From the NCBI GenBank assembly GCA_020184695.1, contig JAANOX010000070.1:248001-312000 (forward strand): a stretch of DNA of 64,000 bases. The letters run 5' to 3'. The position numbers and the translations under genes are program-made. Shown here in pieces: positions 19,214 through 28,259 of this stretch. The notes beneath the pieces were generated by a model. It was given only the letters and a program-made list of their open reading frames with translations. It was not told the origin of the DNA and searched no databases. Within the stretch, counting starts at the first letter, position 1. The number at the start of each line of letters is the position of its first letter. This DNA comes from Histomonas meleagridis 2922-C6/04-290x (Eukaryota; Protista; Parabasalia).

Positions 19214-21334
19214 ATGTCTCGTTTCTTTGTTGAATCAAGTAGTGACAATGATGAAGAAGATTTTGAAGAAGAAGAGGAAAAGAAGATTGCTGAAGAAGAA
19301 ACAAAGCCAGCAAAATCTTCTTTTTTTGATTCTACACCAACATATCGAGAAACAAAACGCACTTTTATGTCAGAAAAGCAAAAACGTTGGATTGAACTTC
19401 GTAATTCGTTAGATTCTGTATTAGATGAACTTGAGTTAGGAAATTATAAAAAATCTTATGAAAATTTCCAACAATTACAAAAAAGTTATTACAAAGCTAG
19501 CAAGGCAATTAAAGAAAATGGCCATCCTGATTTCTTTATTCGTTCAATGAGTGAAATTGTCACAAAAATTGAAGAATTGGTTGAAACCGAAAAAGAATTA
19601 AGGCGTTTTTCACAAGATCTTAAATCATTTTGCAAAGCCTTTAATGACATTCTCGAAGATTACAAGAAAAATCCAGATGATTTCCAAGAAGATGATTTCG
19701 ATACTATGGATGATTTTGATGAGGAAGAAGAAGAAACTGTTACCACCGGTAAATCTGGTGGAGGTGGTTGGTTCGTTAGTTCTGATGATGATGAAGCTGA
19801 CAATATCAAGAAGAAAGTTGAACAAGAAGCCAAACCTCATCAATCTGTTCGTAGGAAGGAAGTCAACTTTGCAGACTCTGTTGAAGCTCGTATTGATGCC
19901 GAATCCAACAAAGTAATTGATATCAATACAGTCAAAACCGAATTACCAGTCTTCACTAAAAAACGTGAAAGTGGTAAAGTTTCCACAACCACCCAACACC
20001 TTAGCGACATGTATGATGCCGTTGTTGGCCAAGACAAAGAACTTGCCAAAGCCGTTCAACTTGAGTTATGCCAAACGGTCTCCCCTCTATCGTCCAACTC
20101 ACCAATTCCGCTTCATGACTGGGAACTTGTTTTACGTTATTTACCCGATCTTAAAGATGAAGGCAAGACCCTTCTTACCCTTTTCGAGCGTCTTAATCAT
20201 GATTTTTGGGCACACTCTGTTGATCCACGACATTTATTTACACCTGACGTATCCAAACTTCATCAAATTGTACCCAAATTTATTGATTTACTTAAAGATA
20301 TTTCCGATTGTTTAATTAAAACTGGCGACAAATCATATGCAGCACGAATATATTTAATTTTAGAGGAACATCTTTATCATAAGGAAACAGAAGACATAAC
20401 ACCGTTAGCATATTTTGTCATTGAAGCAGCATCTACACCTGGTACATTTAGTGACGATGTCGCAATGGACATGAAAGCGCGCGCAGCATTATATCTATGT
20501 ATTAACTTAGCAGTACGTAAGCATCCGATTGAAGCATCGAAACTTTACAGTCGAATTCCATTAATTTCAAGTTCGAATCCGATCACACAAATCTTAGCAA
20601 ACAGAGCACTTGCATCTATTGGTATCGAAGCGTTCAAACAAGGATATTACTTAATAGCGCATCAATACTTATGCAAATTTAATCGATTAGAATATATCGC
20701 GAAGAACATTGGACAAGCACCAATAATATATCCGCCATGGTTAGTGATAGAGCCAAATTATCTTTTGTTACTGAACTATCTTTCAACTGTTTTATTAGAT
20801 TTGCCATATTTAACAGTAACTTCAAAGGCAGAAAACTTGTTAATCGATAATTCTTTACATAGGAAATTACAAAAGGTTCCAATAGTGTTCCATCCAGAGG
20901 CAATCCTTCAGAAAATTGTGTTGGCGATACATAAAGCTAAGAATGGCGATTGGAAAAACGCTTATAAAGTATTCAAAGATGACTTGTCAAAATATTATCC
21001 AAATCACGAAGGTTTCATTGAAAGTTTGAAACAAATTTCGATGACATGTTTCTTATTAACCGCTAACCAGTTTTATGACAACATTTCGGTTGAGGATTTG
21101 GCAAAAATGTTTGAATTAACCAATGAAAAAGTGACAGAAATTGTGAAAGGAATGATCGGCGGTAATGGACCAATAGAAAATGCGAAAATAGAATTTAACG
21201 GTCAGCTTGATGGTAATAATTTCATTATATTCGAACAAACAGAGGTGGAAAGCCCATTGGTGGGTTATGGACAGATGATCAGTTATAGATCAGACATTAT
21301 AGCATCGAAACTGAATGGAAAATCTGAACTTTGA
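19214..21334 (+). CDS. EIF3C: Eukaryotic translation initiation factor 3 subunit C (NIP1)
   Basis: Start MSRFF followed by an acidic tract. KRTFMSEKQKRWIELRN and GHPDFFIR match the eIF3c N-terminal domain. QILANRALASIGIEAF and a C-terminal PCI domain (YDNISVEDLAKMFEL). Confidence 0.88.
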   Translation: MSRFFVESSSDNDEEDFEEEEEKKIAEEETKPAKSSFFDSTPTYRETKRTFMSEKQKRWIELRNSLDSVLDELELGNYKKSYENFQQLQKSYYKASKAIKENGHPDFFIRSMSEIVTKIEELVETEKELRRFSQDLKSFCKAFNDILEDYKKNPDDFQEDDFDTMDDFDEEEEETVTTGKSGGGGWFVSSDDDEADNIKKKVEQEAKPHQSVRRKEVNFADSVEARIDAESNKVIDINTVKTELPVFTKKRESGKVSTTTQHLSDMYDAVVGQDKELAKAVQLELCQTVSPLSSNSPIPLHDWELVLRYLPDLKDEGKTLLTLFERLNHDFWAHSVDPRHLFTPDVSKLHQIVPKFIDLLKDISDCLIKTGDKSYAARIYLILEEHLYHKETEDITPLAYFVIEAASTPGTFSDDVAMDMKARAALYLCINLAVRKHPIEASKLYSRIPLISSSNPITQILANRALASIGIEAFKQGYYLIAHQYLCKFNRLEYIAKNIGQAPIIYPPWLVIEPNYLLLLNYLSTVLLDLPYLTVTSKAENLLIDNSLHRKLQKVPIVFHPEAILQKIVLAIHKAKNGDWKNAYKVFKDDLSKYYPNHEGFIESLKQISMTCFLLTANQFYDNISVEDLAKMFELTNEKVTEIVKGMIGGNGPIENAKIEFNGQLDGNNFIIFEQTEVESPLVGYGQMISYRSDIIASKLNGKSEL

Positions 21335-22133
21335 ATAAAGCTTCTTCTGAAATAAATATTTAATTATTTAATTAGTTATTAGATGTCATCCACTGATAAT
21401 ATTTCCATACATTTAATGATCTTTTTTATGTTGAAAGTATTTCTTAAATTAAATTGATGGAAAATATTTTGGGTAAAAATAATAATTTTATAAGCAAAGG
21501 TAAACACCAAAAATCTGCGTCATTATCCTAATGGTATATTAAATATGAAATATTTTATATTTATTTTACACTGCATAAAATCATCATTAGAATCAATTGT
21601 CTTTAATCTCAACAAAAAAAAAAATTCGAAACGTCAGTTCAGGCAACAATTAATTTATTTGTAGATAGGCTACCGTCATCTGTACACTATCGACAGAAGT
21701 GCGGTACACTAAATCCGAGCTATAGTTTTTAAATGGAAATAATTAATTTAAAAAGAAAAGCCAACATGTAAATGAATAACGAAGGTTTTATAAATAGAAA
21801 TAAATATATGTATTTGGAGCAAATTAATCGTGATTTGAACGATAATGATCAACACAAGTTGATGATGAAGTAGTTGTTATTAAGAACACGTATCAAGAAA
21901 TATTACGTTACTGAAATGTTATAAATCTGTAATCATTTTAATGAATAAGAAAAAAAAAAATTTAATCATTCGACAAGATATTATTATTTTATTAAAATTG
22001 AATGCTGTTGTAATTTGATTCCTCAGTTTACGTTTGTTTGATGAGCGCTCCTTCCGCATCTTTTTATACAAAACAATGATTAACAAAAACGGAAAAATAT
22101 TTTAATACTACATTTTAACATATTTATTATAAC

Positions 22134-22505
22134 TCAAATCCATTGGTCCTCATCTTCCGTTTTCAAACTATTAAATTCATCGTTGGCATTTTCGTGATTT
22201 CCTTCGGTATTTGATGACATATTATTATTTATATTTGATAACGATTTTGTTTTCGTTGTTTGTTTCTTATTTCTCTTCAACATAAATACATAACAAAAGA
22301 AATTCCTCAATAAAAAATAAAATATTTTATAATTTTGCGCATAAATGAATAATTTCTTCATTTCCACTTGCAACTGCATATTATATTTGCCTGTATTTTC
22401 TATATTGGCACCATTCATAAGTAAATATTTTAAACATTTAACAGAAGAAAAAAATGCTGCATAATCGATTAATGTAACATCTTCTTTATTGTTTACTTTA
22501 CACAT
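22134..22505 (-). pseudogene. Chimeric relic: DUF3447-type ankyrin fragment joined to a BspA-type cytoplasmic tail
   Basis: LIDYAAFFSSVKCLKYLLMNGA is followed by YAVASGNEEIIHLC in another frame, shifted by a 5-bp tandem duplication (aatat aatat). The ORF ends with the tail KTEDEDQWI. Confidence 0.62.
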
Positions 22506-22804
22506 TTGTAAATAAATAATAAAGAAGTGGCTTGACTTAAATCAATTAAAAGTTTACGGCGCGCTCAAAAAGTGTTACCGCATAATACCAATGCAAGTAA
22601 TCACAATATAAGTAGTACACTTACTTAGTATGTTTACTAAAACTAAGTTATATAACAATAATAATTTTTACAAAAGTTTTACAAAAACAAAAGGCGCAAT
22701 ACTAAAATTAAAGTTGGAAGAAAATAACGATGTGACGTTGAATCGATTATACAAAAAATGAGAAAATTTAGAACATACTATATATTATTATTTATTTATC
22801 TAAA

Positions 22805-24700
22805 TCACATTTGCTCAATGAATTTCTCTTCTTTGAAGTCATCTGCAAATGGATCTTCTTCAATATTTGAGATAGATATTCCTGTTGTGAATGTGTTTGT
22901 AGTTTGGTTATTATCATTTTGTTGTTCTGAAACTTCATTTTCATCAATTTCTTCTTTTTTATTTTTAATTCGTATCAATAATATAATCAGTAATGAAATT
23001 ATAATAATAATAATAACAATAACACAAACGATTATTATGATAATTGTTGTTTTGTTGTCATTTGTTTGAAATTCATTGCTATAAATAAATGTAAAGAAGT
23101 TCGAATAATAAATATAATAAGTTGAATAAATAATAACTGTGTAATCATAATATATAAATTCTGTTTCAATATAAACATTCGATGAATTAATTGCAATTAG
23201 TGAAAGTGATTTTGTTTGTATTTCATAATAAGTAAATGAATGCGTAAATGATAATGTGATCGTTAATAGATATGAAAAAGATTTCGTTAAATCATTTTGA
23301 AATGATTCAGTAAATGTATTCGATTTTGAATATGTATTACTACGACTGAATGTATTTGACATAGAATATGTATTACTTTTGCTAAGTGTGTGCGATTGAA
23401 AAAATGTATTTGATTGAGAAAATGTATATGATGCTGAAAATGAAAGTGTTGGAATTGGTTTGCAATTTCCTTCTGCATATGATTTGATAACTTTTAATGA
23501 TCCAAAGTTACTTCCTATATATGTTGGATATGTTATAACTGTTGCTGTAACATTATAAAATGCATTTGCTCCAATATTTGGTTCTGTATCACCATAATAA
23601 TAAATACATTCAAGTGCATTACAATTACCAAATGCTGAACCTCCAATTTCTTTTATTCCATACCCAAGTGTTAATATAATTAAATTAGAACATAATGAAA
23701 ATGCTGAAACACCAATCGATGTGACTGAATTCGGTATTGTAATGTTTTTGATTGATGAACATAATGAAAACGCTGATTCACCAATTGTTGTAACATTTCC
23801 TCCAAAAATAATCGTTTCTAAATGTGAACATAATGAAAATGCTGAACCACCAATATCTAATATAGAATTACCAAAATTAACTGAAATAACTAACGGCCAT
23901 CCTGAAAATGCACCACTTGGAATGGTATAAATTCCTTCACGAATATTTATAAATTTCGTGATGCTTTTATATTGTTCAATTTCAGTAAAATCACTTGAGT
24001 TTGTTATTGTTAATGTTAAATTATTATCATAAAATAATTGAAAAGAATTTATGAAAAATACAACAAAAATTATAACATTTTTATGTTTTTTCTTTTCGCA
24101 TGTTTTCAATTTGTAGTTGGTCAAAAAAAAATTATGTGGAAACAGTGGTTTTTTCTGAAAAAAATTGATATAAACCACCACAATCATCATTGAAAAAATA
24201 GCGGTTAAATGAGCATAAACATTGAATTTAAATGGTCGGTCTGTTTTATCGTTTTGCATCAATGGAAAACAAAGAAATTCAAACTGGTTTAAAGACATAT
24301 CCCCATAATGCATATTCAAAGGTTGTGTTGATATATTGTTTTCAATAGGCATACTAGCTATAAAGAACTCATTTTGTGTAATTGTAAAATATGATGCAAG
24401 GAATTTTATTTTGTCATAAAAGAACTGAAGTATTTCTGATGTACACTTGCTGTCAGTCAAGAAATTTGAAAATATACTTGTTTTAAAGAAAGTAGAATTA
24501 ATGTTAAATATATCAAAATTCGCATGCTTAATTCCAAAGACTGGAACTTCTACATTGTATGTATGAGTGGGCCTTTCTTTGCTTAGGATCTTTTTCATAT
24601 TTGATATTTTTGTAGTTGTAAAAAATGGAATTCCTGGTATTGTATCGGATGTAAATTGCTTTATTATGCCTGAAATGAACAGCAAACGAAGAATTTTCAT
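22805..24700 (-). CDS. BspA-like (TpLRR) surface protein with N-terminal extension, S/T stalk, TM and acidic tail
   Basis: LRR units ITIPNSVTSIGVSAFSLCSNL and IFGGNVTTIGESAFSLCSSI. SxSNTF repeats, TM IIIIIVCVIVIIIIIISLLIILLI, tail EDPFADDFKEEKFIEQM. Intact 631-aa ORF from the ATG at 24700. Confidence 0.85.
   Translation of the reverse strand: MKILRLLFISGIIKQFTSDTIPGIPFFTTTKISNMKKILSKERPTHTYNVEVPVFGIKHANFDIFNINSTFFKTSIFSNFLTDSKCTSEILQFFYDKIKFLASYFTITQNEFFIASMPIENNISTQPLNMHYGDMSLNQFEFLCFPLMQNDKTDRPFKFNVYAHLTAIFSMMIVVVYINFFQKKPLFPHNFFLTNYKLKTCEKKKHKNVIIFVVFFINSFQLFYDNNLTLTITNSSDFTEIEQYKSITKFINIREGIYTIPSGAFSGWPLVISVNFGNSILDIGGSAFSLCSHLETIIFGGNVTTIGESAFSLCSSIKNITIPNSVTSIGVSAFSLCSNLIILTLGYGIKEIGGSAFGNCNALECIYYYGDTEPNIGANAFYNVTATVITYPTYIGSNFGSLKVIKSYAEGNCKPIPTLSFSASYTFSQSNTFFQSHTLSKSNTYSMSNTFSRSNTYSKSNTFTESFQNDLTKSFSYLLTITLSFTHSFTYYEIQTKSLSLIAINSSNVYIETEFIYYDYTVIIYSTYYIYYSNFFTFIYSNEFQTNDNKTTIIIIIVCVIVIIIIIISLLIILLIRIKNKKEEIDENEVSEQQNDNNQTTNTFTTGISISNIEEDPFADDFKEEKFIEQM
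23403..24114. repeat. LRR cassette direct repeat copy 1 (712 bp)
   Basis: By visual comparison identical to 26119-26832 except T5 vs T7 and one substitution near the left edge. Confidence 0.93.
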
Positions 24701-25568
24701 ACTTCAAGATCTAATATAGTTGAAGGCCTTTACTAAATACACATCGGCCAATACAAAAGTTAAAAATCATACGGTTAATATGTAAAAAATTTGTTGTTTA
24801 ATTGAAGTTTTTCAATTGAACCTAAAATTTGTTTGTTTCAATATTTAAAGACACCAGGAAAAGATAATACATTTAATGCTTGCAAATGCACTTTTAAATA
24901 ATATAATGAATGGATGTGTTAGAGCTGAGTTTGCTGATTAAAATGATATATCTTTGTTGTTGTTGAGCACTTTTTATAGTATTAAATTTCATGATTTTTA
25001 AGAGATATGCGTTTTATTCTTTTTATGTTAATATATTTTGCGTGATACTGGTAAATATGAATAAGTTAAACACATTCTAACATACATTCGAGATATTATG
25101 TATAATTAAGTGATATATTGCAAAGATAAACATATTGTATGCTAATACATAGCAAATAAAGTTATATCACAAACTCCTTGTTACTTCTATATTGATGGTG
25201 ATTCTTAATAGATTGATTCTAATTATCTTTAAATATAATATTTTGAGGTATGAATGTTTTTCATATAAATAAAATATTTTTCCATTAATGTTTTGTAAAG
25301 TAACTTAATGATTTATATCATTTACATTTAACATTTAATACTAAACGAAATATTTCTATTGTAAACTACAAATCATTTTGTAAATGAATAATATGATTCC
25401 GTTTGATCTTTAGAATGTTACATCAACAATATTCAGCATTTTCGATGTTTTCATTGTTGATTATATCAAAGTGATAATCGATTAATATTTCTCATTGCGA
25501 ATCATTTCATAGTTTTTATTTAAATTAAAAATATATCAATTAAAAATATATTTTTATTTTAAATTAAA

Positions 25569-27325
25569 TCACAGCCAATTGTCTTCATCTTCTTTAACAA
25601 TATCTTCAACTAAAGTATTGACATCTTCCTTTTGATTTAAACTTGATGTAGTTGAATCTTTAAATTGTAATGTTGAAGTCGATTTTCCTTTTTTGTTATT
25701 ATTTTTAATTAAGAATATAACAATTCCAACAATTATTAAAACTAATGCAATTGATCCGCAAACAATTCCAATCAATGCATTCATTGTAAGTCCATTCGTA
25801 TGTAAAATGTTCGTGCGAAACATTGTAATGAAATTTGAATAATAATTGTAATATGTCGAATACATAATAACTGTGTAATCATAATAAAGAAATTCCGTTT
25901 CGATATAAGAAAATGTTGAATTAAATATGGATAATGAAAGTGACCTTGTTTGCGTTTCATAATATGTAAATGAATATGCAATTGTCAATGTATACGTTAA
26001 TGCATATGAAAACGAAAATGTGAAATCGCTTTGAAACGATTGAGTGAATGTATTTGACTGTGAATATGTGTTACTACAACTGAATGTATTTGACTGTGAA
26101 TATGTGTTACTTCGACTGAATGTATTTGATTGAGAATATGTATATGATGCTGAAAATGAAAGTGTTGGAATTGGTTTGCAATTTCCTTCTGCATATGATT
26201 TGATAACTTTTAATGATCCAAAGTTACTTCCTATATATGTTGGATATGTTATAACTGTTGCTGTAACATTATAAAATGCATTTGCTCCAATATTTGGTTC
26301 TGTATCACCATAATAATAAATACATTCAAGTGCATTACAATTACCAAATGCTGAACCTCCAATTTCTTTTATTCCATACCCAAGTGTTAATATAATTAAA
26401 TTAGAACATAATGAAAATGCTGAAACACCAATCGATGTGACTGAATTCGGTATTGTAATGTTTTTTTGATTGATGAACATAATGAAAACGCTGATTCACC
26501 AATTGTTGTAACATTTCCTCCAAAAATAATCGTTTCTAAATGTGAACATAATGAAAATGCTGAACCACCAATATCTAATATAGAATTACCAAAATTAACT
26601 GAAATAACTAACGGCCATCCTGAAAATGCACCACTTGGAATGGTATAAATTCCTTCACGAATATTTATAAATTTCGTGATGCTTTTATATTGTTCAATTT
26701 CAGTAAAATCACTTGAGTTTGTTATTGTTAATGTTAAATTATTATCATAAAATAATTGAAAAGAATTTATGAAAAATACAACAAAAATTATAACATTTTT
26801 ATGTTTTTTCTTTTCGCATGTTTTCAATTTGTTAAGTAAAAATTTAATTTCATAACATAAAAAAAATCCCAAAATAAAAAAGTAACGCATTAGAGTTTGA
26901 ACATTTTCATTGAATTTGAACATTTTCTTTATGAAACTATTATTCATTGGCATTGCTAAATGTGCTTTTAATGAAAAATGATTAAGTACTAAAGAAAAGA
27001 ATTGGAAACAATGTTTAACGTATGAAATAGGTAATTCTAGCAAAGGGGAATGGCACTGACATCTTCTTGTGCTGATATTAAATGGATTCAATTCATTATC
27101 TTTTAGCATAATAAAATTGGTGACTTTGATGGATACATTCTTTTTATTAAGGCATGAGAATGTAAAGTATGTCTCCCACTTGGATTTTAAAGTAAGGCAA
27201 GGGGAGTACTGGTGAGTTTGAGAAATAGATAATTGATCACTAAAAATCTTGGAGCATAAGTTTTTTGGTGAGGTTTGTAATAAGCAAAAGAAATGTATGG
27301 GAAAAACCAAGATGAAATAACACAT
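25569..27325 (-). pseudogene. BspA-like surface protein, frameshifted at a homopolymer
   Basis: ATG at 27325 with signal-like MCYFILVFPIHFFCLLQTS. Same LRR block as the neighbouring gene, with a 2-nt expansion at 26461-26467 splitting it into track ORFs 26396-27334 and 25569-26480. TM ALIGIVCGSIALVLIIVGIVIFLI; tail KEDEDNWL. Confidence 0.85.
26119..26832. repeat. LRR cassette direct repeat copy 2 (714 bp)
   Basis: See copy 1. The offset changes from 2716 to 2718 across the T-run. Confidence 0.93.
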
Positions 27326-27579
27326 TCGTGCCAAAACTTGAGAAACTTGCTAATAAATCAGTCAAATACGATACAGAAAGCTTCAACCGCTTCTTCTTTT
27401 CGTCAGTTCATTTGTATAACTTTTACTGAAACGCGTTTTATTGTTTTTGCAATCGGAAGATGTTCACAAAGCTGAAACGTAATGGTATTAATGAAAAGTG
27501 ACAGAAAGTTCCTTATTCAAATTGTCGAAGAAGACAAAAAAATGAAAGAAAGAAAATGATATCGTTTAGCATCAAAATC

Positions 27580-27990: not shown

Positions 27991-28259
27991 TGATTATGTT
28001 AATGTTAAGCATTTTTAATTGAATTATTTTCATTGAAATTTTCCATCGTTTTTTTACAACGAGGAATTACCCTTTGCCGATTAAAAATCAAACAAAACCA
28101 ATCGGAAAAATCCGATATGTTCAATTCCTTTCAATTGCGGGCGGTTCCTTTAGCGCACCCGTATTATTTTATAATCTTAACGTTTATATTATTTTGCACA
28201 AAAAAACTGAAAATCAAAAACAAAATAAAAATTAGATTAGGGGAGAAGTCCCGGGGTTT

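What the first reader, a model, noticed from the sequence alone, without database searches (positions are those of the whole stretch)
23403..26832. Near-identical 712-bp LRR cassette plugged into two otherwise different surface-protein genes
Copies at 23403-24114 and 26119-26832 appear identical apart from one substitution and a T-run. The flanking N-terminal extensions and the TM/tail modules (EEKFIEQM vs EDEDNWL) are very divergent. Whole-gene duplication would not give this pattern. It points to module-level gene conversion or cassette shuffling that recombines a ligand-binding LRR with different stalks and sorting tails, a possible surface-variation mechanism.
Basis: partly seen in the sequence, partly recalled or inferred. 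Interest (0 to 1): 0.75.

Follow-up and report, generated by a model that had tools for sequence, protein, structure and literature searches.

The report
Gene conversion in paired BspA genes
Two neighbouring surface-protein genes of the poultry parasite Histomonas meleagridis keep the same leucine-rich-repeat part because that part is repeatedly copied from one gene to the other, and all ten such gene pairs examined in this genome show it; this is a clear but ordinary case of concerted evolution.

Summary
Window 23403-24114 and 26119-26832 (both genes on the minus strand) are identical except for one substitution and a two-base difference in a homopolymer run.

The genome is the attenuated Histomonas meleagridis assembly (43,133,364 bp, 281 contigs). 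The genes encode BspA-type LRR membrane proteins.

The pair is one of at least 21 dispersed two-gene units, always in the order beta then alpha. I examined 10 of them.
- The two partners are 97-100% identical over about 570-960 bp.
- The same segment is only 83-92% identical between units.
- The upstream N-terminal modules are unrelated between alpha and beta.
- The TM/tail parts fall into two deep clades, alpha and beta.
- Holding alpha cassettes as one clade is rejected (p-AU 7e-74). The 3' parts split by type at 100/100 support.

This is recurrent gene conversion within each unit. The 5' limit is fixed where homology ends. The 3' limit varies and mostly lies in an 18-nt repeat array.

Free cassette shuffling is not supported, because only two flank types exist. 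Three beta-front/alpha-tail chimeras look like collapsed pairs.

The frameshift in gene B lies within the assembly's reported error rate. The subfamily seems to be missing from the annotated proteome. First-stage notes on other pieces of this genome describe the same pattern, unchecked.

The parts
22805..24700 (-). Gene A (alpha type): intact 631-aa ORF, BspA-type LRR membrane protein
   Evidence: the ORF listing. Pfam LRR_5 at 90 bits against a cut-off of 27.7. Collinear with P0001, a 605-aa protein from another organism.
24113..24700 (-). Alpha N-terminal module (aa 1-196): hydrophobic start and TM1 (24158-24208); no known family
   Evidence: An ORF with ATG at -586 from the cassette start is open in 8 of 14 alpha copies and aligned. 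dN/dS 0.70. No Pfam match. Weak collinear match to the N-terminus of P0001 (E 6e-4). AlphaFold pLDDT 21-30.
23403..24114 (-). Homogenised tract in gene A: basic loop, TM2 (24035-24079), about seven 23-aa LRRs (Pfam hit 23612-23959) and cap
   Evidence: The AlphaFold model has strands every 23 residues, pLDDT 75-95.
23315..23443 (-). Ser/Thr-rich hexapeptide (18-nt) repeat array of gene A, where the identical tract ends
   Evidence: In 7 of 10 pairs the tract ends inside this array.
22808..23047 (-). Alpha TM3 (22976-23047) and cytoplasmic tail (22808-22975) carrying EEDPFADDF
   Evidence: Hydropathy. The tail is nearly invariant in 15 copies. dN/dS 0.18.
25569..27325 (-). Gene B (beta type): same architecture; the frame as assembled is interrupted inside the cassette
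   Evidence: ORFs 26396-27334 and 25569-26480. Intact beta paralogues of 560-611 aa exist, e.g. L012, L014, L021.
26834..27325 (-). Beta N-terminal module (164 aa): hydrophobic start and its own TM1; unrelated to the alpha module
   Evidence: An ORF with ATG at -493 is open in 8 of 15 beta copies, and in a ninth (L028) with ATG at -511; aligned. hhalign alpha against beta gives probability 0.1%. dN/dS 0.57.
26119..26832 (-). Homogenised tract in gene B
26461..26467 (-). Homopolymer run whose length differs by two bases from gene A (23745-23749); this is where gene B's frame breaks
   Evidence: The same run differs between the partners L003 and L004. The source assembly reports 99.79% accuracy and 21,822 unfiltered indels between strains, of which 2 were confirmed.
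25572..25778 (-). Beta TM (25707-25778) and cytoplasmic tail (25572-25706) ending EDEDNWL
   Evidence: dN/dS 0.40.
24701..25568 (-). Spacer between the two genes; homologous in other units
   Evidence: Seven other loci match most or all of its length at 82-91% identity. The last ~300 nt before the alpha ATG match in most units.
27335..27576 (-). Conserved ~240-nt 5' flank of the unit (query positions 1225-1466 of window:27335-28800:-)
   Evidence: More than 30 loci match at 79-95% identity; alignment.
22510..22804 (-). 3' flank of the unit, shared only with the closest units
   Evidence: C32 89%, C249 90%, C256 76%.

Best explanation
The window holds one copy of an old two-gene unit of Histomonas meleagridis: a beta gene followed by an alpha gene, both BspA-type LRR membrane proteins. 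The two genes share a homologous core (basic loop, TM2, LRR, Ser/Thr repeat, stalk). Their N-terminal modules are unrelated, and their TM/cytoplasmic tails diverged long ago. The unit has been copied to many places in the genome. Within each copy, non-reciprocal recombination (gene conversion) between the two direct repeats, 2.7-4.8 kb apart, repeatedly overwrites one LRR segment with the other. The partners therefore stay about 99-100% identical there, while different units have drifted 8-17% apart. The 5' limit is fixed because homology stops there. The 3' limit varies and usually falls in the 18-nt repeat array, where the partners differ in unit number. Occasional crossover between the two cassettes deletes the DNA between them and leaves a single gene with a beta front and an alpha tail. 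Shown here: the repeat itself, the unit structure, the conflicting trees and the chimeras. Inferred: the molecular mechanism, and the idea that each unit displays one LRR ectodomain on two chassis with different tail signals.
For: Genome identity: 43,133,364 bp in 281 contigs equals Table 1 of PMC8529796 for the attenuated strain. Family size: 311 first-look candidates, of which 40 were scored at 83-92% identity, mostly as same-strand pairs; a TM2 24-mer hits 73 times, and I count 21 adjacent pairs among them. Two conserved upstream types occur, always beta before alpha. Within-pair identity is 97-100% over the cassette in 10 of 10 pairs, about 50% upstream and about 55% far downstream. In the cassette tree 9 of 10 pairs are sisters and the alpha/beta labels are fully interleaved; holding alpha as one clade costs 982 lnL units, p-AU 7e-74. 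In the 3' tree, restricted to the paired genes, alpha and beta tails are separate clades at 100/100, and the window pair as a clade is rejected at p 3e-4. The sister unit on C32 differs from the window unit by 8% in the cassette, 4.4% in the alpha N-module, 9% in the spacer and 7-11% in the flanks, so within-unit identity arose after the units separated. Tract 3' ends vary from 572 to 961. In L023 the beta-like stalk runs right up to the alpha TM. L007, L014 and L027 join a beta front to an alpha tail, and L007 has the beta 5' flank and the alpha 3' flank with no spacer. Purifying selection on the stalks and tails (dN/dS 0.18-0.40) shows these are, or recently were, working genes.
Against: Only one assembly was available, so no conversion event was seen directly and no reads were checked. 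About 60% of copies have at least one frame break as assembled, and no protein more than 48% identical exists in the protein database, so expression is unproven. dN/dS of the N-modules (0.57-0.70) and of the cassette (0.63) shows only weak constraint. One pair (L008/L010) is not a strict sister pair in the cassette tree.
Confidence: 0.85

Rival explanations
1. This is a programmed cassette-exchange or antigenic-variation system: the LRR module is moved on purpose between different stalk/tail chassis, or switched on and off by homopolymer slippage, to vary the parasite surface.
For: LRR segments differ by 8-17% between units. The variable positions sit in the exposed part of the repeat, after the IG of each unit. 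Chimeric beta-front/alpha-tail genes exist. Frame breaks recur at the same homopolymer runs in several copies.
Against: Only two flank types occur and their order is fixed. Both partners are full genes with their own conserved 5' regions; neither is a silent donor. Conversion makes the partners alike rather than different. The indel differences, about 0.8 per kb within pairs, are in the range of the assembly's stated error (99.79% accuracy; 21,822 raw indels between strains, only 2 confirmed).
Confidence: 0.08
2. This is an assembly or polishing artefact: the two cassettes are truly different but were made identical by repeat collapse or by short-read polishing of a Nanopore assembly.
For: The assembly is Flye from Nanopore reads with three rounds of racon using Illumina reads, and base accuracy is only 99.79%.
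Against: The same pattern occurs in 10 of 10 pairs on 8 contigs. The tracts end at different points, and some pairs carry up to 9 real substitutions. The flanks are unique and the repeat is only 0.7 kb with 2.7-kb spacing, which long reads span easily. Short reads from copies 8-17% apart would not cross-map well enough to erase every difference.
Confidence: 0.04
3. Each pair arose by its own recent tandem duplication, and the differing fronts and tails were acquired afterwards.
For: The within-pair cassette identity is very high.
Against: The alpha and beta fronts, the spacer and the tails are each homologous across units at 77-95% identity. The two-gene layout is therefore older than the units, and the same unrelated flanks would have had to be acquired independently in every unit.
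Confidence: 0.03

Closest known systems
TvBspA-like proteins of Trichomonas vaginalis with a transmembrane domain and cytoplasmic tail (Noel et al. 2010, PMC2843621; Handrich et al. 2019, PMC6701047)
   Same: A BspA-type 23-aa LRR ectodomain, a C-terminal TM and a short tail with endocytic-type motifs; DxF and FxDxF are on Handrich's motif list. A large family with tandem and ectopic duplicates.
   Different: Here an extra N-terminal module and two extra hydrophobic segments precede the LRR. The genes come as fixed beta-alpha pairs. Homogenisation restricted to one domain is not described in those papers; a search for 'gene conversion' with 'BspA' found no paper describing it.
Annotated BspA-like proteins of H. 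meleagridis (94 counted in PMC8529796), e.g. P0007
   Same: Same organism. P0007 has the same stalk, TM and an EDPFADDF tail motif.
   Different: P0007 is only 31% identical and lacks the N-module. The subfamily studied here has about 70 or more loci and appears absent from the protein database.
Concerted evolution of tandem paralogues by gene conversion, e.g. the human fetal G-gamma/A-gamma globin genes and plant LRR resistance-gene clusters (from my own knowledge; Leister 2004 is cited in PMC2843621)
   Same: Partners in one locus are more alike than counterparts elsewhere. The tract covers only part of the gene, and one boundary lies at a simple repeat.
   Different: Here the same partial homogenisation is seen in parallel in all ten dispersed copies of one unit that I examined (at least 21 such pairs exist), which amounts to a natural replicate experiment.
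Cassette-based antigenic variation (trypanosome VSG, Borrelia vlsE, Neisseria pilin; from my own knowledge)
   Same: Gene conversion acting on segments of surface-protein genes.
   Different: There are no silent donor cassettes and no single expression site. The outcome here is sameness within a unit, not new variants.

Membership tests
BspA-like / TpLRR proteins (Pfam LRR_5, PF13306) | LRR_5 match above Pfam's gathering score | tested here: met
   Gene A scores 90.2 bits against a cut-off of 27.7. The two pieces of gene B score 46.8 and 48.5 bits.
BspA-like / TpLRR proteins (Pfam LRR_5, PF13306) | Repeat unit of about 23 residues forming a solenoid | tested here: met
   In the AlphaFold model strands start at residues 250, 273, 296, 319, 342, 365 and 387, with pLDDT 75-95.
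TvBspA TMD-CT subclass (membrane-anchored, with endocytic tail motifs) | C-terminal TM helix followed by a cytoplasmic tail with sorting motifs | tested here: met
   Hydropathy peak at aa 552-575. The alpha tail contains DPF and FADDF, which fit the DxF and FxDxF patterns used in PMC6701047. Whether the motifs function was not tested.
Concerted evolution by gene conversion | Paralogues within a locus are closer to each other than to same-type genes at other loci, in one segment only | tested here: met
   AU test p 7e-74.
Concerted evolution by gene conversion | Adjacent segments of the same genes give a conflicting tree | tested here: met
   The 3' parts of the paired genes split by type at 100/100. 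The window pair as a clade is rejected at p 3e-4.
Concerted evolution by gene conversion | Conversion events observed between isolates or within a lineage | not testable with these tools
   Only one assembly could be reached.
Cassette-type antigenic variation system | Silent, promoter-less donor cassettes feeding an expression site | tested here: not met
   Both partners are complete genes with their own conserved 5' regions and start codons.
Phase variation by homopolymer slippage | Read-supported run-length variation within a population | not testable with these tools
   Run-length differences exist between copies, but at a rate that the assembly's error can explain.

The most novel reading that the evidence does not exclude
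The beta-alpha pair is a selected 'one ectodomain, two chassis' device. Conversion is kept up by selection so that each unit shows the same LRR specificity on two proteins with different N-modules and different tail signals: alpha with a DPF/FxDxF endocytic-type motif, beta with an acidic tail ending in W-L. The 20 or more units, whose LRRs differ, would then form a repertoire of ligand-binding or antigenic variants that current Histomonas annotation misses.
Probability: 0.15. Interest if true: 0.7.

Novelty: new member of a known kind. Interest (0 to 1): 0.4.

Why it matters
BspA-like proteins are candidate adhesins of trichomonads, and Histomonas causes an untreatable poultry disease. This work gives three results.
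- A subfamily of about 70 loci, with an unusual three-hydrophobic-segment architecture, seems to be missing from the published count of 94 BspA proteins.
- Its genes evolve as pairs, so trees built from the LRR region will mislead about gene relationships.
- The many parallel units offer a natural system for measuring conversion tract lengths and boundaries in a parabasalid.

As a mechanism it is textbook concerted evolution.

Tried and rejected
1. I first took the hydrophobic stretch at the cassette start for a signal peptide with a nearby start codon. No in-frame ATG exists there in any copy, and the nearby ATGs are neither conserved nor in frame. The start must therefore lie in the upstream modules.
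2. A word search with the alpha N-module found nothing. Pfam found nothing for either N-module. hhalign shows no alpha-beta relationship.
3. AlphaFold with a 6-row alignment gave no confident fold for the N-module or the stalk (pLDDT 21-30), so no fold search was made.
4. I looked for a sharp 5' unit boundary with terminal repeats that would suggest a mobile element. Homology fades by subfamily instead, so I dropped this.
5. I looked for a trichomonad initiator-like motif before the two start codons; the result was not decisive.
7. dN/dS of the LRR between units is 0.56, so there is no overall signal of positive selection.
Full report
OBSERVATION

Window 23403-24114 and 26119-26832 are the same sequence. 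They differ by a two-base change in the length of one homopolymer run (23745-23749 against 26461-26467). They also differ by one substitution (23421/26137), 18 nt from the 3' end.

Both copies lie on the minus strand inside BspA-type LRR genes (Pfam LRR_5). Gene A is an intact 631-aa ORF (22805-24700). Gene B is split by the run-length difference into ORFs 26396-27334 and 25569-26480.

Upstream of the tract, identity drops at once to the random level. Downstream it steps to about 72-80% and then to about 50-59%.

ORGANISM

An eIF3c gene lies next door at 19214-21334, so the organism is a eukaryote. The assembly has 43,133,364 bases in 281 contigs. These are exactly the figures in Table 1 of Palmieri et al. 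2021 (PMC8529796) for the attenuated strain of Histomonas meleagridis.

That assembly was made with Flye from Nanopore reads and polished with three rounds of racon using Illumina reads. Its stated accuracy is 99.79%. Of 21,822 raw indels between the two strain assemblies, only 2 were supported by reads.

THE PAIR IS ONE COPY OF A DISPERSED TWO-GENE UNIT

A search of the whole genome with the 712-nt tract gave 311 first-look candidates. Forty were scored, at 83-92% identity, and most lie in same-strand pairs 2.7-4.8 kb apart. A 24-mer from the TM2 region hits 73 times, and I count 21 adjacent pairs among those hits.

In the 30 loci I could fetch, the DNA just upstream of the tract is of only two kinds. 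Alpha resembles gene A and beta resembles gene B. In every pair, beta comes first in the direction of transcription.

Several parts of the unit are conserved between units at 77-95% identity:
- about 240 nt before the beta start codon;
- the spacer between the two genes;
- the roughly 300 nt before the alpha start codon.

The roughly 300 nt after the alpha stop is shared only with the closest units, at 76-90% identity.

The two-gene layout is therefore older than the spread of the unit.

CONCERTED EVOLUTION

In all 10 pairs for which I had both genes, the partners are 97-100% identical across the cassette. They are about 50% identical upstream and about 55% identical far downstream.

In a maximum-likelihood tree of the cassette, 9 of 10 pairs are sister taxa and the alpha/beta labels are completely interleaved. 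Forcing alpha cassettes into one clade costs 982 log-likelihood units (p-AU 7e-74).

The 3' part gives the opposite picture. Among the paired genes, alpha and beta tails form two deep clades with 100/100 support. The window pair as a clade is rejected at p 3e-4.

The unit on contig C32 is the closest relative of the window's unit. It differs from the window's unit as follows:
- 8% in the cassette;
- 4.4% in the alpha N-module;
- 9% in the spacer;
- 7-11% in the flanks.

Had the two cassettes of a unit evolved independently since the units split, they would differ by about that much. Instead they differ by 0-9 substitutions. Homogenisation has therefore happened within each unit after the units separated. 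That is the signature of gene conversion.

TRACT BOUNDARIES

The 5' edge is the same everywhere because the alpha and beta N-modules are not homologous (hhalign probability 0.1%), so there is nothing further to pair with.

The 3' edge varies. By the criterion it lies at +572, 688, 695, 712, 726, 729, 760, 804 and 961. The identity profile puts the tenth pair at about +860.

Seven of the ten ends lie in the Ser/Thr hexapeptide (18-nt) repeat array at about +670 to +800, where the partners differ in unit number. In pair 7, the alpha gene L023 has the beta-type stalk right up to its alpha-type TM helix. That tract ran further, probably from beta to alpha.

This resembles the classic fetal globin case, in which a conversion tract ends at a simple repeat (from my own knowledge).

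CHIMERAS

Three single genes (L007, L014, L027) combine a beta front with an alpha tail. At L007 the beta 5' flank and the alpha 3' flank are both present and the spacer is absent. This is what a crossover or single-strand annealing between the two cassettes of a pair would leave behind.

I found no gene with an alpha front and a beta tail. Recombination thus occasionally makes a new combination, but the repertoire of flanks is just two, not an open set.

THE PROTEINS

No in-frame ATG lies in or near the cassette. Instead, an upstream ORF continues in frame. It is 195 codons in alpha, with ATG at -586 and starting MKIL. It is 164 codons in beta, with ATG at -493. It is open in 8 of 14 alpha copies and 9 of 15 beta copies (in one beta copy, L028, with ATG at -511), with indels in multiples of three.

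A 605-aa protein from an unrelated metagenome contig (P0001) is 48% identical in the core. It is collinear with alpha from its own MKIL start through the N-module (hhalign E 6e-4). I therefore take the N-modules as coding, though weakly constrained (dN/dS 0.70 and 0.57).

Hydropathy suggests this order of segments:
- a hydrophobic start;
- about 140 aa of unknown fold;
- TM1;
- a basic loop;
- TM2, which is the first part of the cassette;
- about seven 23-aa LRRs, confidently modelled;
- the Ser/Thr repeat;
- a Tyr-rich stalk;
- TM3;
- the cytoplasmic tail.

The stalks and tails are under clear purifying selection (dN/dS 0.18-0.40). The alpha tail carries EEDPFADDF, which fits the DxF and FxDxF endocytic patterns that Handrich et al. 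screened for in trichomonad BspA tails. The beta tail ends in EDEDNWL. These two motif readings are inference, not tests.

THE FRAME BREAK IN GENE B

Within pairs, most differences inside the cassette are one- or two-base changes in homopolymer runs, about 0.8 per kb. That is the order of the assembly's stated error.

The break in gene B, and those in about 60% of copies, may therefore not be real. I describe where the break is and go no further.

ANNOTATION GAP

Searches of the 5.8-billion-protein collection found no protein more than 48% identical in the core and nothing for the N-module. Three intact ORFs are not present as exact sequences. Other H. meleagridis proteins are in the collection: P0007, at 31% identity.

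The genome paper counts 94 BspA proteins. The subfamily described here, about 70 loci, therefore seems not to have been called as genes. I could not check the GenBank record directly.

LITERATURE

Tandem and ectopic duplication of BspA genes, and the idea that pseudogenes might serve as a reservoir for recombination, are discussed for T. vaginalis (PMC2843621). A full-text search for BspA, gene conversion and Trichomonas returned two papers; going by title and abstract, one is on Trichomonas transmembrane cyclases and the other on Entamoeba taxon-specific proteins, and I did not read either, so no report of this pattern in BspA genes turned up.

VERDICT

The open-ended cassette-shuffling and surface-variation part is not supported.

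The mechanism is well known. The instance, its parallel replication across units and the unannotated gene architecture are new.

First-stage notes on other pieces of this genome describe the same pattern. They were unchecked and did not enter my scoring.

LIMITS

- Only one assembly was available and no reads.

Noticed in passing
window 22134-22505 (-): A short ORF just downstream of gene A has an ankyrin-like start (weak Pfam hits), a hydrophobic segment and a tail ending EDEDQWI. That ending closely resembles the beta BspA tail end EDEDNWL (pairwise E 0.002). It may be a sorting signal shared between unrelated membrane protein families.
   Followed up: partly
window ~22320-22490 and ~21956-22288: Two short stretches downstream of gene A are dispersed repeats: about 160 nt at 85-89% identity in 25 or more loci, and about 330 nt at 76-87% in 10 or more loci. 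They overlap the ankyrin-like ORF.
   Followed up: no
window ~28001-28161: A 160-nt element upstream of the unit recurs at 93-97% identity on at least 7 loci in both orientations. It may be a small mobile element.
   Followed up: no
G000 C11:46127, C26:69066, C33:331332 and 160565, C87:101320, C269:117245, C278:55225: In the wider units (4.2-4.8 kb spacing, and one of 3.7 kb) a third, more divergent BspA copy sits between beta and alpha. At L026 it is only 79% identical to the cassette and looks degenerate in the parts I could read. It has escaped the homogenisation going on around it.
   Followed up: partly
whole genome G000: The 33-nt stretch encoding the alpha tail motif EEDPFADDFKE occurs 164 times with up to 3 mismatches, against 0 for the control. 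That is far more than the roughly 70 copies of this subfamily, so the tail is shared by a wider set of membrane protein genes.
   Followed up: no
G000 C258:264164-266848 (L005): This unit has the beta 5' flank and the spacer only about 440 nt apart, so most of the beta gene appears to be deleted.
   Followed up: no
L010 (G000 C11:78458): The alpha gene of pair 3 has an unrelated 3' part (very long branch; unrelated ORF). It is probably truncated or rearranged.
   Followed up: no
window 19214-21334 (+): An intact 706-aa eIF3 subunit c gene (Pfam eIF-3c_N) showed that the window is eukaryotic.
   Followed up: yes
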